Both the position numbers and the translations under genes were made by a program. The notes beneath the pieces were generated by a model. That model did no database searches. It was not told the origin of the DNA and saw only the letters and a program-made list of their open reading frames with translations. From the NCBI GenBank assembly GCA_964304625.1, contig OZ199838.1:8729904-8793903 (forward strand): 64,000 bases of DNA, written 5' to 3'. The stretch comes from Kudoa neothunni (Eukaryota > Animalia > Cnidaria). Each line of letters begins with the position of its first letter. The stretch's first letter is position 1. Below, in pieces: positions 1 to 42,600 of the stretch.

Positions 1-3000
1 TCTTGATAAATCGGCTGGACAGAAATATTCTTATAAAGTGTTGACCAACTTTGATATCCAACGTTCCAACTAACTTCGAAGGAATTCTACACCATTCTGG
101 GCTACTCGGAAACCATCTAAGTGTAGAATCGAATAATTTTAAGCTTTATTACATTTGATGATATTTAATTGCTAACTTTATTCCCTAATAAATAAATGAA
201 TTGTGTTGTTTGAACTTATCGATTTAAATTGAGTTTCCGCTTATTGCGGGTAGCAATGCCAAAACTAGACTTAGTTTTTTGCAAAATCAAACATAAAAAT
301 TAATGATTTTTTTTCATAATCTAATTGAGATAATATTTTCTGTTTTATTTATATTGATTTCGGGCCAAATTTTATAACAAGTTTTATATATAAATCGTAT
401 CATGTACCTTTAAGCAATTTATCCTCATTTAACATACAAAATTATAGGTCAAAAGTTAGCGTTGATATTGTGTACTAAAAGCAAATATCATGACATCAAA
501 TGCACTGTTTTCGTTAGATTCTTAAATGATAAATGATTCAGGAATAACAAGGAATAGGCGATATAAATTAATGTTTAATTGAAATTGAGGATTACTACAA
601 ATGCGTATCAATTTTAGTCTTGTGATGTTTATTCAGATCCCCATTTAAACTGCCATACTATAAATAGCGGTGATTTGTTGTCTCAACTCATTCTCTTACA
701 TTTTTCAATATAAATAAAGCTAGAAAAACGTTATATACACTTCAATAGTATTAAAAGTAAAAATAATTGCAGTAATATTACAGTTAGTTCCAGAGATTTT
801 ATTATAGCCTTAGAAACAATGGCATATGGTTTATTTTAAAAACATTATCGTTTTTAGTGTTTATAAATCATTATCCCCAATGACCAATTTTAAATTTAGA
901 TACAATCATTTAAATTTTTTTCACCTATATTAAAGTTTTATATAATAGTATACGACTTTATAAAAATACATCTGTTATTTATTAGCTGAATTTTGAATAA
1001 AACAAGAAAAAGAAATCTCGTTTATCGGACTACTAGAAAACGATATCAACTTAAAACAAACAACTTAAACCAGATTCAATAAGTATAAATCTTATAGCTA
1101 TTAAATAAACGGTTAAATAATGAATTGCTCTTCACCATATTCTTCGATTCTATATTGTTCTGACATTTGTATTAATGGAGATGAGAAATTATTGCAAATT
1201 TAATTCTATCAACATTCAATTTCTTAGGGACAATATTTTTGGTTTCATTCGCTCTAAAAATTCCACCAATAAAAATATTCTAAATAATCTGCTAGTTATT
1301 TTTTTAATTATAATCAAGATATTATCTAACATAATTAATTTGCGGCATAATTTATTAATTCTACTTTAAACTAAAAAAAGAAATTCTAGTATAATTTTTT
1401 TGACTTTACAGGAGTTTGTGTCTCGTGGAAAAATTAATATTCTTCATAAAAACGTCCAAAATTTATATTTTGCTACATTCTCTTTATAAGAAACTCTAAG
1501 AATTAATTCATGAAATTTGAAACGAATACCTAAAGCCTTTTTAATTCCAACCCGGCTTTTTATAATTAATGTAGTTTTCAATAAAATTAAATGAAAATTA
1601 TATTTGTTCGCACCTGTAAACTCTTACAGTGAAAGGCATCACATCTTTGATAGTTATCTTTGAATCAACGGTCACATTGATGGAATAATCATTTTCACTT
1701 TTATAATGATTGAAGTATTTGTCAAGAGTAGGAAAATCTATCGTGAATATATTTTGATATTTTATCATTTCTTTTTCAGTCAGTTGTAAATTTCCCAGAA
1801 TAACTGCAATAACAACGTTCATCATAATTGTTACAGACAGCATGTGGCATCCTGTGAGAAGGAGAATGATAAAATAACTGAGTACACTGTTTGCTTCATT
1901 GGCCAAACCATATATTTCATCAAATGCAGTATCCTAAATGGATATTATATATTAATATCAATGTAATTATAACCTGAAGGAAAATGTTGAATATTAGTTT
2001 GAACCCAGAGAGGAAATTACTAACGAGAGGTTCGTTCTCAACCGAATTTATGCCAGAAAATATATGAAGTACAACAACTGATAAAATTATCAAAGATATC
2101 AACGAATAAACCATAGCGTAACCAAAAATCCTGAGGTTGCCAAACAACTTTCGAAAGTACAGGTAGATAGCTTGATTCATTGTAATAAGTCGTATGGATC
2201 GTAATGAAAAAATTATATTAAGATACGATATTTGAAAGTAGCTTAGCACCGCCGATATTACACCAAAAATAAGGTTTAGAGCTAAGATTAAAGCGGATCC
2301 TGTTCGTAGAAATTTCGAAAACCCAAGAGCCATTATCTTTAGAATCACCTCTATGCTGTAGATTGAACATAAAACCAGTTGAAATAGCCAAAAATAATCC
2401 CGATACTATAAAAAATATGGAAATTAAAACTATTTATCTAATAACTTACAAATATAACATAAAATATCTCCATTATTATCAGCATATACACAAAAAATGT
2501 GAAATAACTGTGATACGCTATTTTTCTAACCATTGTTCGCATACTTGAATTTTCTTTTTCATATTTAAGCATGCCATCTACAGTTTTAAAGTCGGTGCCA
2601 CCTCCCAGTTTTACGTTTACATTTTCTAAAAAATAGATTAAATATAAATATTTTCTCGAAGAGCATGATATTTTGGATGTGATTGTTGATTGGTAGTGTC
2701 ATTAGATAATTTAAAAATATTTACTTTTAATTATAAAAAATCATTAATTTTTTTACAATAATTAACTCGTCCATTAGATAGACGTAATTTTGTAGCTGAT
2801 TCCAAACATCAATTATAGCTGTTTGAGGAATAAATATACTTAATTCGAATTTTACATTATCATCTGTGGCACTGTTTAATATTACGCTTTCCATGGCATC
2901 AGACGTAACAGATATGAAGATGTTTTTAATGACCCACGATACAAAGTAAAACATGAAGAGAAAAAAGAAAAACCCTCCTACGTAGTTATAACCAGTTAAC

Positions 3001-4269
3001 ACTGTTTTAAATCGATCAATGAATCCATTTTGAGTAGAGGCTTCATAAACAAATATGAACCCTATATAATAATATAAATATTTGATTTATATATCAAATT
3101 AAAATTTATAAAAAAAGAAGTTACCATCAAAACCATTAAGAAAGAGTGAATTTAGTCGGCTTAATCCTAAATCCCTGGTGTCTTCACATGTGTAATATGT
3201 ACCACATACGTCCGAAGTATTCAAAGAAGAATTTGTTATTTTGCATGAGACTTGAGGATACAAAAATATAGAATCATTAATTTCATTTGTTTTAGAATTC
3301 TTATCGACTTCAGTATCCACACATGTTGTAGTTAACCCTCCAATAATACGAGTTCCCGCCATTGTGAATGTGATCGATACGCAGAGATTAAAAAATAGGG
3401 AGACCGCAAATTTTAACGCTGTATTCTTAGTTAAAATATCTTCAACGTGAATTCCATCGTGTCTGAAGGTTAACAACAGAACAAGTGCTCTAGGAATACG
3501 TAAAATTGAAAAGCCAATGTACACCGAGGGCTGAATATCATAATGTTCCAATACCTTTATAAATATGAATTAAAATATTTATCATTTTTTCCTACATTGA
3601 TAATTTATTATCTAAAATCTAGAATTATTAAAAAATTTAAAACTATTTCAGACCATGTAAAGCAAAATTAAAGCTAGTTTAGTCATTTATATCTACCTGT
3701 AATATCAGGGATACCATCGTGATAATATTTACAGTCAGAGTATGAATATTCCAAATATCTTTGGTGTAAGCATTTCGTCCCCTTCTAAGAGAGGTAAGTT
3801 TTATACGAGCAAGAGCATCCAATGTGTAAAAAAGTGTCGTCAAAACATCCAAAATATATACAAAGTACAAAATTATGGGATTGCCGTCTATTTGTGGCGG
3901 AACGTTCATACATAATGACGCAAAGTTCAAAATACATATTATATTGAAACTAAACTTGTACAGTTTAGACGTAAATACTTTGTAAAATTGTTTTTCTTTT
4001 AATTTTCTTTTCTTTACCTCTGCACTAAGAATATTATCTCGGTGGGCCATCAATAATATTTCATCGCGGTTTTGGGTCCTTTCGGCCATAATATTCTGTT
4101 TGTTTTTAGATGTTGATATTTTATTTTGTGTAGATTCTTGAATTACATTTTGATTAGTAACGCTCAATAAAAACTCATTTTTTCCCTTCAAATGGAGCTG
4201 TTTCATCAGATATACTCTCCGAACCTTCTCCAATTTCAGGTACCAACAATCTCGGGACTTCTCTCCCAT
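1..4269 (-). CDS. NALCN: NALCN-family 4x6TM cation leak channel, multi-exon, 3' part (domain III/IV pores) beyond left edge
   Basis: Exons match NALCN motifs: LCMNVP, DI S4 ILRIPRAL, DI pore VYEASTQNGF, DI S6 SWVIKNIFISV, DII EVILKIMALGF, DII S6 HMLSVTIMMNVVIAVILGNLQL. Joined by short GT-AG introns (1934..1973, 3062..3124). An exon at about 1..115 (QHFIRIFLSSRFIK) may be DIII S4. Start codon uncertain (4269 or ~4089). Confidence 0.9.
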
Positions 4270-4873
4270 CCTTCATTTTATCTATGCCAACTACAACAGT
4301 TTTTGTGTGATTCTTGTTTGGAAACATAATTATTGACTTATTCAGGAATCCATGGGTTGAAATTAGGATTTTTCTGTTTCTTAGTAATCATATAACATAT
4401 TCAAAAATTTTGTATCTATAACTTTAAAGTATCTCTATAAGTTCTTATCGAGAGAACTTTTCCTAAAACTTTAGCGATTTGAAAATTTTCGTCAGAGATA
4501 TATTGTATCCCAATTGTTACAACAACTCCGAATTAAATTTAGGAAATATTTTTGTATCAAGACAAATTAAGAAATGGATTTTTGCTTAAGTCTTTTGTGT
4601 CTAACGTTCATTTAAATTAACATTGGGAAAATGGCATCTCTGTGGCGCTCTATTTTAAATATTTTATCCAAAATAGTTTCAAAATGTTTTAATTTTTTTG
4701 TCTATTTAAAATAAAATTGAAAAAAATTTTAAGAAATCATGACAATCAAATACTGAATCTAAATTTTAAATTGCGTCATTTTAAACAAATTTATTTTAAT
4801 GCATAATTAGAGTATATTCCATAAAAGATTTCTTCTAAAATATATTTTGTCGTAGTTGAAAAATATTTATATA

Positions 4874-39680: not shown

Positions 39681-42600
39681 TGTAGTATATAATAAAGATT
39701 AACTATATCCAGAGTACAGTGCGTATATAGATGCTTGTGTTTTCATTGTGAATAGTGTCTCTCTGCGCTCAATACTATACTGGCGACGAGGACAATAGTA
39801 AACATGAACAACACACCGGTATTCAACGAGAAGGAGGAAGATTGGGACAGCTATTTCGAAAGAGTGTCCCTATATGCCCAGGCGAATGGATATGAGAAAG
39901 CCGTGAAAAGGAAATTGTTGTTGGCTGAAATGGACGCCAAAGTCTATGGTATCCTGAAAACATTAGCTGCATCCAAACAAGTCTCTCAGTTGGAATTAGA
40001 TGATATAAATGCGCTCTTGAGGAAAAACTTTGGCGCAAAGTCATTGGTACTCGCGGAACGCTTCGCATCTTGGAAAGCGGAGCAAGCTGAGAAGGAGGCA
40101 GTCAAAGATTACGCGATGCGTCTCAAAAAGCTCAGCACTAGCTACGATTTTGGGACATTTATAGAGGAAGCATTACGAGACAAGTTCGTCATTGGATTAA
40201 AAAGTAGCCTAGCTGCTGCCCAACGAACGCTCCTAACCGAACAAAAAGTGACCCTAGAACGGGCAGCAGACCTGGCGTGTGCGATGGAAATGGAGAAAGC
40301 CGAACAAGAGAAGATGCGACATGAAAATATCAATTCGCTGAGAAATAACAAATAGACCCCCTAAAAAGTACTATAGAAGTGGTCATAGATGTCCCTGTTG
40401 CAACGGGAGACATGGGACGATCCCCTGCAGATTCGCGAAAGCAACATGCTTTAATTGTGGCGAGACGGGGCACATCTCTAGGCCCTGCAAAAAGGTCTGA
40501 AAAGATGGAAATATCAAATCAGTCTCAGATGATAACAATATTCGTGATAATGTTTTTGATATTAATTATGTGGCTCCTATATTTTTGCGTTTACTCATTA
40601 ATTCGCACGCTATTAATATAGAAGTGGATACTGGATCACCGGTTACACTAATCAATTAAAGAAATTTTAAGCAAATAGGAGGAAGATTATCTAGCGTAAC
40701 ATCGGTTTTCAGAGGATATGATGGTTCTATAATTCGGATTAAAGGAATGTGTCTAGTCGATGTGTTATACAAAAGTAAGCAATACAAATTACCACTATAC
40801 GTCTCGGATGATGAAGGTATCAACATCACAGGAAAAGACTGGCTAAAGAGTATTGCAACAAATGGTCGTTGGAAATCAAAAAGGTCCCTTGTCCACCTAT
40901 ACGAGACATCTGTGATTGGTATAGCGAGCTGTTTTCGGATGAAATTGGAAAACTTAAAGGTATGAAAGTGTCGATTACCTTGAAAAATGATATTTTGCCT
41001 GTATTTCACAAACCCATCCAGACTAATTTCGTTGTACGAACGAGATATGGTATCAACTAAACTTGATCGTTTAGTTGAATGTCAAATACTAAAACAAGTG
41101 AAGTTTAGCAAATGGGCGCCCCTTATTGTTGCCGTGGGAAAAAAAGAACAGTGGGATTCGTATTTGTGCCGATTTTTCGATGTGATTGATATGGCAAACG
41201 CCTACCTACAATTAGAAGTTGATAATGATTCTAGAGAATTGTTGACGATAACTACACATAAAGGCCTATATTAATATCAAAGACTACCGTTTGGATTAGC
41301 ATCCGCCCTGCGAAATGGCAACGTACAATGGATGATATTAAAGGCGTTCCGAGTGTTCAATGTTATTTGGATGATATAATTATAAGTGGGAAAACTAACG
41401 AAGAGCACATGGAAATACTTGAACATGTCATGAGGTTACTGAATAACCACGATGTCAAAGTAAATGCAGTTTCCTTTTTGACTCCGTGGAATACTGCGGA
41501 TATATTATCTCAAGTGACGGTATTAAGAAAAGTTTAAAAAATATGGAGACAATCGAAAATATGGAGCGACCAGTGGATAAGAAAGGCGTTTGTACTTTCT
41601 GTGGAATGATAAATTATTACAGAAATTTTATTCCTTACTTGGCAGAGTTCATCCAACCTTTGTACGATTTACTAACTAAAAATAAAGAATTTTTCTGGGA
41701 TGAAACACATGAAAAGACTTTTAGGAAAACATAAGAAGAGCTGTTAAACGACAAAGTACTAATTCCGTTCGACCTCTCGTTGCAAATAACGTTAGCAACG
41801 GACGCATCAACAAATGGTATCGATGCAGTGTTATCTCATGTGATGGAGAATGGTAATGAAAGACCGATTATTTTTGTTTCAAGATCTCTTTCAAAAAGTG
41901 AGCAGAATTACTCCAACTTTGAGAGAAAAGGTCTGGCCATTGTGTGGGTAGTTAAAAAATTGAATCATTATTTGGAAGACAGACGCTTCTCATTAATAAC
42001 AGATCACAAACCATTATTAGGTATCTTCAACTCGAATACGAGAATCCCTAAGATTGCCGTTTCAAGAATACAGAGAGGTGCTGTGATACTTTCGGGATAC
42101 CAATTCCAAATGAAATATAAGGCGGGTAATGTCAACTTACCTGCCGACTGTCTTTCACACCTTCATACGCAAAATGGAAATGGAATGATAGCGTCTAATG
42201 ATAATTTGATTTACGATGCAATCTTTATCAAATCTGTTTCTAGTCAAATAGATAGTGCATTTCCACCTCAGAAGATCAAACACGAAACTGAAAATGATAA
42301 TATCCTCAAGAGTGTGCTGGAGAATTATGAAAAGGGATGGAGACAAAAAGTAGACGCGCGATTAATTCCTTTCAAAGAAAGGAAGGACGAGATATCCTGC
42401 ATAGAGGGCGTATTCTGCGTGGGCGAAAGACTTAATATTCTCGAAAAGTTAAGACCGAAGATTCTGCAACGGTTACATAATGGTCATTTGGGTATCACGA
42501 GAACGAAGGCTCTGGCAATGAGTTATGTATGATGGCCCCGAATTGACCTAGACATAGAGAGACTCATATTTGACTGTAAAAGTCGTCAAGAAGGGAAGCG

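What the first reader, a model, noticed from the sequence alone, without database searches (positions are those of the whole stretch)
1900..3060. NALCN-family channel with a non-canonical selectivity filter (DI Asn, DII Asp; both pore Trp lost)
Seen: DI pore reads VYEASTQ-N-GF (N codon 3027..3029), and DII, after removing intron 1934..1973, reads IFLQ-D-TAF (D codon 1931..1933). Both align without gaps to recalled human ASQ-E-GW and LTQ-E-GW through to S6. Known: NALCN filters are EEKE, EKEE, EEEE or EDEE, so DII Asp has precedent, but I know of no neutral DI residue or loss of both GW tryptophans. Inference: altered ion selectivity, or a non-conducting/regulatory paralogue.
Basis: partly seen in the sequence, partly recalled or inferred. 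Interest (0 to 1): 0.8.

Follow-up and report, generated by a model that had tools for sequence, protein, structure and literature searches.

The report
Myxozoan NALCN with NDDD pore filter
A neuron-less parasitic cnidarian (a myxozoan) keeps an intact sodium-leak-channel (NALCN) gene whose four ion-selecting residues read Asn-Asp-Asp-Asp instead of the Glu/Lys ring of all described animal NALCNs; the change is conserved in a second species and resembles the filter of Cch1, the fungal calcium channel related to NALCN.

Summary
On the minus strand lies a 16-exon gene with no internal stop (about 1669 aa). It starts in the window and runs 3.4 kb past its left edge. Its exons match human NALCN far better than Nav or Cav channels, and a tree puts it inside the animal NALCN clade, next to Thelohanellus and Myxobolus NALCN.

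- **Filter:** N286 (codon 3029..3027), D552 (1933..1931), D1088 and D1367.
- **Pore Trp:** replaced by Phe in DI and Ala in DII, kept in DIII and DIV.
- **Splice:** the 40-nt intron 1973..1934 is real. An orthologue from another species has no intron there and reads the same peptide.
- **Conservation:** that orthologue is also N-D-D-D at 49% protein identity with saturated synonymous sites, so the gene is under selection.
- **Other myxozoans:** Myxobolus and Thelohanellus read D-G-D-D.
- **Paralogues:** the genome has no canonical NALCN, only a second, more diverged one (about S-G-E-Q).
- **Precedent:** Fungal Cch1 is N-E-E-E with the DI motif N-[GT]-F.

The most likely function is a lysine-free, Ca2+-permeable cation channel. 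This is inferred, not shown, and expression could not be checked. The scan had already noted x-D-D-D in the adjoining window.

The parts
3697..4089 (-). Exon 1 (ATG at 4089; an upstream in-frame ATG at 4269 is also possible): N-terminus and DI S1-S3
   Evidence: Pfam Ion_trans E 4e-7. The donor at 3697|3696 (GTAGAT) is the best-scoring junction.
3125..3554 (-). Exon 2: DI S4 (three K/R), S5 and the extracellular turret with four Cys
   Evidence: Junctions 3697|3554 and 3125|3061. tblastn to NALCN proteins P0004 and P0005. S4 alignment.
2840..3061 (-). Exon 3: DI pore loop and S6. The 3' end (2840) is uncertain, because it lies in the I-II linker.
   Evidence: PDB phmmer matches only NALCN below E 0.6 (E 2e-4), gapless over residues 272-324.
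3027..3029 (-). DI filter codon AAT = Asn286, opposite human E280. Phe288 (3021..3023) stands in place of W282.
   Evidence: The same AAT Asn is found in orthologue L009.
2450..2625 (-). Exon 4: I-II linker and DII S1
   Evidence: GTAAGT donor at 2449 and TTTTATAG acceptor before 2405. The 5' junction is uncertain.
1974..2405 (-). Exon 5: DII S2-S5 and pore helix 1, ending ...I-F-L-Q
   Evidence: Pfam Ion_trans E 2.5e-6. PDB NALCN residues 416-548, E 1e-5.
1934..1973 (-). 40-nt GT..AG intron inside the DII pore loop
   Evidence: Best junction. The intron is absent from the orthologue, which reads straight through with the same peptide.
1614..1933 (-). Exon 6: DII filter, S6 and the start of the II-III linker
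   Evidence: tblastn to T. kitauei NALCN, 37% identity. Junction 1614|116 gives ...V-R-V-Y-R-W-F-P..., which matches the post-S6 motif of NALCN.
1931..1933 (-). DII filter codon GAT = Asp552, opposite human E554. Ala554 (1925..1927) stands in place of W556.
117..1613 (-). Intron 6, 1497 nt (36 nt in the orthologue). It is unique in the genome and holds no duplicated pore exon.
1..116 (-). Start of exon 7 (II-III linker). The gene continues left of the window to G000:C1:8726479. The DIII filter Asp1088 is at C1:8728409-8728411 and the DIV filter Asp1367 at C1:8727524-8727526.
   Evidence: The DIV open frame L002:7248-8348(-) matches human NALCN at E 3.7e-36.

Best explanation
This is the myxozoan orthologue of the NALCN pore subunit: one polypeptide of four 6-TM repeats, about 1669 aa, collinear with human NALCN. 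Its selectivity ring has changed from the cnidarian E-E-E-E to N-D-D-D. Shown: family membership, the residues, the exon structure, the conservation and the absence of a canonical copy. Inferred: it still forms an ion-conducting pore. With three carboxylates, one amide and no lysine, it most likely passes cations including Ca2+. In that respect it would resemble fungal Cch1 (N-E-E-E) or the Asp-containing rings of Cav3, rather than the Na+-preferring, lysine-containing NALCN of bilaterians. Its S4 segments are charge-poor, like or beyond those of other NALCNs, so gating would be weakly voltage-dependent at most. In an animal without neurons it would act as a background or Ca2+-entry conductance in non-neural cells.
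For: Family: the DIV open frame matches PDB NALCN at E 3.7e-36 against Nav1.5 at 3.6e-15 and Cav at 1e-3. The DI and DII exons match only NALCN. The III-IV linker motif N-E-N-x-G-T-A-L-L-T...Q-R-R-W is present. In the tree, the myxozoan sequences form a clade (SH-aLRT 99) inside the animal NALCN clade (100).

Intact and selected: 16 exons, 15 GT..AG introns and no internal stop. The orthologue L009 has the same exon plan. Protein identity is 49%, the synonymous difference is saturated (pS 0.69), dN is 0.45, and the repeats are more conserved than the linkers (dN 0.31-0.43 against 0.60-0.73).

Filter: N-D-D-D in both species. T. kitauei and M. squamalis read D-G-D-D. So all four species carry three Asp and one neutral residue. 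The Asp equivalent to human D558 is kept, and so are the Cys frameworks of the DI, DIII and DIV outer loops.

Precedent for such a ring in a working Ca2+ channel: fungal Cch1 is N-E-E-E with DI N-[GT]-F (PMC3410928). The link between lysine-free acidic rings and Ca2+ permeation comes from PMC3557258, PMC4436565 and bioRxiv 10.1101/2025.04.04.647097.

A possible partner: a short UNC80_C match above Pfam's cut-off elsewhere on the contig.
Against: There are no electrophysiology data and no structural model of the whole pore. Two of the four pore tryptophans, which normally brace the filter, are gone. DIV S4 has lost its arginine. UNC-79, UNC80_N, the central UNC80 domain and Mid1/FAM155 profiles found nothing in the genome, and human NALCN needs these partners to give currents. 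Ion preference cannot be read from four residues alone: Cav3 work in PMC4436565 shows that outer loops also set selectivity. The tree used the quick method and has long myxozoan branches.
Confidence: 0.6

Rival explanations
1. It is a non-conducting or regulatory pseudo-channel. The protein is kept for scaffolding or sensing, or as a partner of paralogue B, but no longer passes ions.
For: The Trp is lost in DI and DII. S4 charges are reduced. Most channelosome partners were not found. Earlier scan notes, which I did not check, describe several other four-domain channels with degraded filters in this genome.
Against: Three acidic filter residues are conserved in four species across deep divergence. 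The pore helices, the S6 segments and the III-IV linker are the best-conserved parts. A dead pore would not be expected to keep the ring.
Confidence: 0.2
2. It is still an ordinary Na+-leak channel like bilaterian NALCN, and the filter change is functionally neutral.
For: NALCN filters are variable between phyla (bioRxiv 10.1101/2025.04.04.647097). Selectivity also depends on the outer loops (PMC4436565).
Against: There is no lysine in the ring. In every 4x6TM lineage reviewed in those papers, Na+ preference goes with a Lys in DII or DIII (PMC3557258). The cnidarian ancestor was already E-E-E-E (P0012, in a cluster with a Rhopilema NALCN-like protein).
Confidence: 0.12
3. It is a pseudogene or decaying gene.
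For: The organism has lost its neurons. The protein is highly diverged (about 30% identity to other NALCNs). There is an unusually long 1.5-kb intron.
Against: There are no stops or frameshifts over 5 kb of coding sequence in 16 exons, and every intron is GT..AG. The orthologue has an identical exon plan and open frame despite saturated synonymous sites.
Confidence: 0.03
4. It is a splice or annotation artefact: the true mRNA uses another exon or splice site that restores E-G-W in DI or DII.
For: Other invertebrate NALCNs have mutually exclusive pore exons (PMC3557258). No RNA data were available here.
Against: No second copy of either pore exon lies in the gene region. The DI motif sits inside a single exon. 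The intron-less orthologue reads the same DII peptide.
Confidence: 0.03

Closest known systems
Human/rat NALCN (PDB 7CU3, 7CM3, 6XIW, 7SX3)
   Same: Four-repeat architecture and nearly the same length and filter positions (286/552/1088/1367 against 280/554/1115/1389). Also shared: the III-IV linker motif, charge-poor S4 segments, the outer-loop cysteines and the D558 equivalent.
   Different: The filter is N-D-D-D instead of E-E-K-E. Trp is replaced by Phe in DI and by Ala in DII. DIV S4 has no Arg. Identity is only about 30%.
Cnidarian NALCN (P0012; its 90% cluster includes a Rhopilema esculentum 'sodium leak channel NALCN-like' protein), filter E-E-E-E
   Same: Same animal NALCN clade. No lysine in the ring.
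   Different: All four Glu are replaced, and two pore Trp are lost. The myxozoan branch is very long.
Thelohanellus kitauei KII61376.1 ('Sodium leak channel non-selective protein') and Myxobolus squamalis KAF1745272.1
   Same: Sister lineage of the same gene. DIII and DIV are Asp, and the DII Trp is replaced by Ala.
   Different: They read D-G-D-D: DI is Asp with G-W kept, and DII is Gly. The neutral position therefore sits in DII, not DI. Both deposited gene models lack DI, which lies upstream on the same contigs.
Fungal Cch1 (for example Cch1p of Trichomonascus vanleenenianus, P0065)
   Same: One neutral residue plus three acidic ones. Asn in DI is followed by [GT]-F in place of G-W. S4 segments are charge-poor (PMC3410928).
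   Different: Cch1 has Glu, not Asp, in DII-DIV and keeps the DII Trp. It lies in a separate clade, so the likeness is convergent.
Cav3 T-type channels (E-E-D-D)
   Same: Asp in the filter of a four-domain channel. According to PMC4436565, the shorter side chain goes with weaker Ca2+ selectivity.
   Different: A different subfamily, voltage-gated, with all four Trp kept.

Membership tests
NALCN (animal sodium-leak channel, 4x6TM) | Single polypeptide with four homologous 6-TM repeats | tested here: met
   Ion_trans matches in DI and DII. PDB alignments cover the DI pore, DII, and DIII S6 through DIV. The 1669-aa model is collinear with human NALCN.
NALCN (animal sodium-leak channel, 4x6TM) | Closer in sequence to NALCN than to Nav, Cav or Cch1 | tested here: met
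   E 3.7e-36 for NALCN against 3.6e-15 for Nav and 1e-3 for Cav. The best hits among the 1.84 billion cluster-representative proteins searched are myxozoan and other animal NALCNs.
NALCN (animal sodium-leak channel, 4x6TM) | Placement inside the animal NALCN clade | tested here: met
   SH-aLRT 100 for the 15-row NALCN clade and 99 for the myxozoan group within it. The tree is a quick search with long branches.
NALCN (animal sodium-leak channel, 4x6TM) | Conserved III-IV linker motif (N-E-N-K-G-T-A-L-L-T-V-D-Q-R-R-W) | tested here: met
   The gene reads N-E-N-V-G-T-A-L-L-T-L-P-Q-R-R-W.
NALCN (animal sodium-leak channel, 4x6TM) | Charge-poor S4 segments | tested here: met
   Three to four K/R per aligned S4 window. 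The Arg that other NALCNs keep in DIV S4 is missing.
NALCN (animal sodium-leak channel, 4x6TM) | Selectivity ring E-x-x-E (EEEE, EDEE, EKEE or EEKE; PMC3557258) | tested here: not met
   N-D-D-D. This is a feature of the pore chemistry, not of descent. It lowers 'works like NALCN', not 'descends from NALCN'.
NALCN (animal sodium-leak channel, 4x6TM) | Partners UNC79, UNC80 and FAM155/NLF-1 present in the genome | tested here: inconclusive
   The UNC80_C profile gives one 64-aa frame at 24.9 bits (cut-off 22.1), and human UNC80 is its top PDB match at E 0.1. UNC-79, UNC80_N, UNC80 and Mid1 gave no match. There was no positive control, and proteins in this genome are very diverged.
NALCN (animal sodium-leak channel, 4x6TM) | Carries a Na+-permeable leak current | not testable with these tools
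   Needs electrophysiology.
Fungal Cch1 | N-E-E-E ring with DI N-[GT]-F | tested here: not met
   DI matches (Q-N-G-F), but DII-DIV are Asp and the DII Trp is lost.
Fungal Cch1 | Placement in the Cch1 clade | tested here: not met
   The Cch1 rows (P0041, P0043, P0046, P0048, P0059, P0065) form their own clade, apart from the NALCN clade that holds this gene.

The most novel reading that the evidence does not exclude
Myxozoans, which have no neurons, have turned NALCN into a Cch1-like Ca2+-entry channel. Its ring always carries three Asp and one neutral residue (N-D-D-D in this lineage, D-G-D-D in Myxobolidae), reached independently of fungi. A second conserved paralogue with an almost uncharged ring (about S-G-E-Q) acts beside it. 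This would be a natural experiment showing what NALCN does outside nervous systems, for example in Ca2+ signalling for polar-capsule discharge or sporoplasm motility.
Probability: 0.3. Interest if true: 0.75.

Novelty: new variant of a known kind. Interest (0 to 1): 0.55.

Why it matters
The ion selectivity of NALCN, and its role outside neurons, are open questions. The 2025 channelosome preprint states that the selectivity of invertebrate NALCNs is uncharacterised. This gene is a selected, lysine-free, all-Asp/Asn ring in an animal that has lost its neurons. It breaks the published E-x-x-E rule for NALCN and converges on the DI motif of fungal Cch1. It also points to concrete mutations to test in human NALCN: E280N/W282F, E554D/W556A, K1115D and E1389D. 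Finally, it shows that the deposited myxozoan NALCN gene models are truncated. In the held library I found no paper that links NALCN and Myxozoa.

Tried and rejected
- **Short exons:** Pfam and PDB searches of the short exons 4 and 6 alone gave nothing. The DI frame of paralogue B has no PDB match.
- **Partners:** profiles for UNC-79, UNC80_N, central UNC80 and Mid1 found nothing. The long open frames next to the UNC80_C hit match neither UNC80 in Pfam nor anything in PDB.
- **Alignment runs:** I used a faster mode and a quick tree.
- **Rejected readings:** alternative pore exons; intron 6 as a repeat or transposon; any Rfam RNA in the window.
- I searched exon by exon, by reference. The joined model was used only inside my own scripts for local alignment, dN/dS and the tree. 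For this reason no whole-pore structure prediction was made.
- **Uncertain junctions:** the linker junctions 2840|2625, -109|-230, -343|-385 and -3105|-3150 are best guesses.
Full report
**What is in the sequence**

The window is AT-rich (26-40% GC). It maps to G000:C1:8729904-8793903 in a 40.3-Mb assembly of four contigs. Reading the minus strand of 1..4500 shows a chain of open frames separated by short GT..AG introns.

The DI pore reads V-Y-E-A-S-T-Q-N-G-F, with the Asn codon AAT at 3029..3027. One exon ends ...I-F-L-Q at 1974. Positions 1973..1934 are a 40-nt intron.

**Family**

Pfam finds Ion_trans in exon 1 (E 4e-7) and exon 5 (E 2.5e-6). Against all PDB chains:
- The DI pore exon matches only NALCN below E 0.6 (E 2e-4). 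The alignment is gapless over residues 272-324, with Asn on E280 and Phe on W282.
- The DII exon matches NALCN 416-548 (E 1e-5), ending five residues before E554. The first residue of the next exon (Asp) therefore falls on E554, Ala on W556, and the next Asp on D558.

The gene continues left of the window. A 367-aa open frame (L002:7248-8348, minus) covers DIII S6, the III-IV linker and DIV. It matches human NALCN at E 3.7e-36, against Nav1.5 at 3.6e-15 and Cav1.1 at 1e-3. That alignment puts Asp on E1389. The same output shows human DIII as L-S-L-K-G-W, against L-T-I-D-A-W here, so K1115 corresponds to Asp.

**Gene model**

I scored every in-frame GT..AG pair against homologues. This gave 16 exons and 15 introns: most are 40-64 nt, with outliers of 120, 142, 214 and 1497 nt. 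The model has 5010 coding bases, 1669 residues and no internal stop.

The filter residues are N286, D552, D1088 (C1:8728409-8728411) and D1367 (C1:8727524-8727526). These sit almost at the human positions 280, 554, 1115 and 1389. Trp is replaced by Phe in DI and by Ala in DII, and is kept in DIII and DIV. Four linker junctions are uncertain; the pore junctions are not.

It was used only inside scripts.

**Relatives and selection**

I searched the DIV frame against 1.84 billion cluster-representative proteins. It found one 52%-identical fragment (P0001), then Myxobolus squamalis KAF1745272.1 and Thelohanellus kitauei KII61376.1 (annotated as sodium leak channel), then animal NALCNs.

P0001 lies on a 9.5-kb contig from run SRR31175926 (L009, 18% GC). 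That contig carries the whole orthologue with the same exon plan, with two differences: the DII pore intron is absent and intron 6 is 36 nt. The intron-less DII frame reads S-I-F-V-Q-D-T-A-Y-D-E-I-Y, which confirms the splice proposed for the window.

The orthologue's ring is also N-D-D-D (codons AAT, GAT, GAC, GAT). The two proteins are 49% identical. Synonymous differences are saturated (pS 0.69). dN is 0.45 overall, 0.31-0.43 in the four repeats and 0.60-0.73 in the linkers. This rules out a pseudogene or a sequencing error.

On the T. kitauei and M. squamalis contigs, DI lies upstream of the deposited gene models and reads S-I-Q-D-G-W. DII reads F-L-Q-G-G-A-F. With DIII T-L-D-S-W and DIV T-G-D-N-W, these species are D-G-D-D. 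All four myxozoans therefore carry three Asp and one neutral residue, but the neutral residue sits in a different repeat in the two lineages. The DII Trp loss is shared by both. The DI Asn/Phe is specific to the window's lineage.

**Phylogeny and paralogues**

A maximum-likelihood tree was built from 42 rows and 1221 columns (LG+C20 PMSF, quick search).
- It recovers a 15-row animal NALCN clade (SH-aLRT 100).
- Inside it is a myxozoan group (99): window gene plus L009 (100), sister to Myxobolus plus Thelohanellus (100).
- A second gene from the same genome lies outside these (89).

The branches are long, so the inner order is less sure than the clade itself.

That second gene (paralogue B, G000:C1:15583387-15588739, plus strand) also matches NALCN best (E 7e-12 against Nav at 3e-6). 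Its ring reads roughly S-G-E-Q. Its DIV motif N-Q-D-W recurs as N-Q-N-W in a 48%-identical fragment from the same SRR run, so B is conserved too.

Searching the genome with an E-E-E-E NALCN (P0004, source organism not named) found only these two loci. There is no canonical NALCN.

**Precedent**

In the alignment of distant hits, a large group reads N-E-E-E with DI N-[GT]-F. Named members are fungal, including Cch1p of Trichomonascus. Prole and Taylor (PMC3410928) report that fungal Cch1 has three rather than four acidic filter residues.

So a neutral DI residue with loss of the DI Trp is normal in the fungal sister family. It is not known in animal NALCN, for which Senatore et al. give E-x-x-E with EEEE, EDEE, EKEE or EEKE (PMC3557258, PMC4436565). 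Because the myxozoan gene sits inside the animal clade, the likeness to Cch1 is convergent.

I found no paper linking NALCN and Myxozoa. One hit mentions both terms, but in unrelated places. The 2025 channelosome preprint does not mention myxozoans.

**Mechanism**

- **Shown:** an intact NALCN orthologue under purifying selection, with ring N-D-D-D, conserved pore helices, S6 segments and III-IV linker, conserved outer-loop cysteines, and charge-poor S4 segments (DIV S4 has no Arg).
- **Inferred:** the pore conducts. Without a lysine and with three carboxylates, it should admit Ca2+ as well as monovalent cations. According to PMC4436565, the shorter Asp side chains would weaken Ca2+ selectivity compared with E-E-E-E. 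Voltage dependence should be weak.

Partner subunits are unresolved. One 64-aa frame at C1:10880215-10880409 passes the Pfam UNC80_C cut-off (24.9 bits) and has human UNC80 as its top PDB match at E 0.1. UNC-79, UNC80_N, central UNC80 and Mid1 profiles found nothing. These searches had no positive control.

**Organism**

The nearest relatives and the tree support a myxozoan. Earlier scan notes suggest Kudoa neothunni, but I could not test the species. An earlier first-reader note on the adjoining window had already read x-D-D-D for DII-DIV, and my reading agrees.

**Verdict**

This is a new filter variant of a known channel family, conserved and probably functional, with a convergent parallel in fungal Cch1. 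Function is still untested.

Noticed in passing
G000:C1:15583387-15588739 (+), loci L006:8387-10000 and L007:1-3739: A second, much more diverged NALCN-like gene (paralogue B). Its DIV frame matches PDB NALCN at E 7e-12. The ring reads roughly S-G-E-Q; DI and DII are tentative, DIII (M-E-S-W) and DIV (N-Q-D-W) are clear. The modelled parts have no stops. A 48%-identical fragment with N-Q-N-W (P0054, L015) comes from the same run as the orthologue of gene A.
   Followed up: partly
G000:C1:10880215-10880409 (-), L012:236-427: A 64-aa open frame passes the Pfam UNC80_C cut-off (24.9 bits, E 5.7e-6) and has human UNC80 as its top PDB match (E 0.1). It lies in a region of 10 kb or more, rich in open frames on the minus strand. 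It may be a very diverged UNC80. The neighbouring frames match nothing.
   Followed up: partly
L013:8781-9815 (T. kitauei JWZT01005339.1) and L014:1396-3151 (M. squamalis QWKW01000204.1): The deposited NALCN models KII61376.1 and KAF1745272.1 are truncated at the N-terminus. DI (S-I-Q-D-G-W), and for M. squamalis also DII, lie upstream on the same contigs in open frames. The full ring in these species is D-G-D-D.
   Followed up: yes
window 117-1613: Intron 6 of the NALCN gene is 1497 nt. The other introns are 40-214 nt, and the same intron is 36 nt in the orthologue. The sequence is unique in the genome and has no Rfam match and no duplicated exon. The reason for its expansion is unknown.
   Followed up: partly
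window 39804-42532 (GC-richer block about 40-46 kb): Remnants of a Ty3/gypsy-type LTR retroelement: a Gag/PNMA-like frame, plus RT_RNaseH (E 4.5e-28) with an integrase zinc-binding motif. Only two frames of 150 aa or more survive, so it looks degraded. I observed it only and did no reconstruction.
   Followed up: partly
L009 (SRR31175926 contig): The relative that carries the orthologue has an extreme base composition: 18% GC overall and GC3 of 9% in this gene, against 33% in the window's gene. Its introns are 31-46 nt (one poorly supported linker junction implies 131 nt).
   Followed up: no
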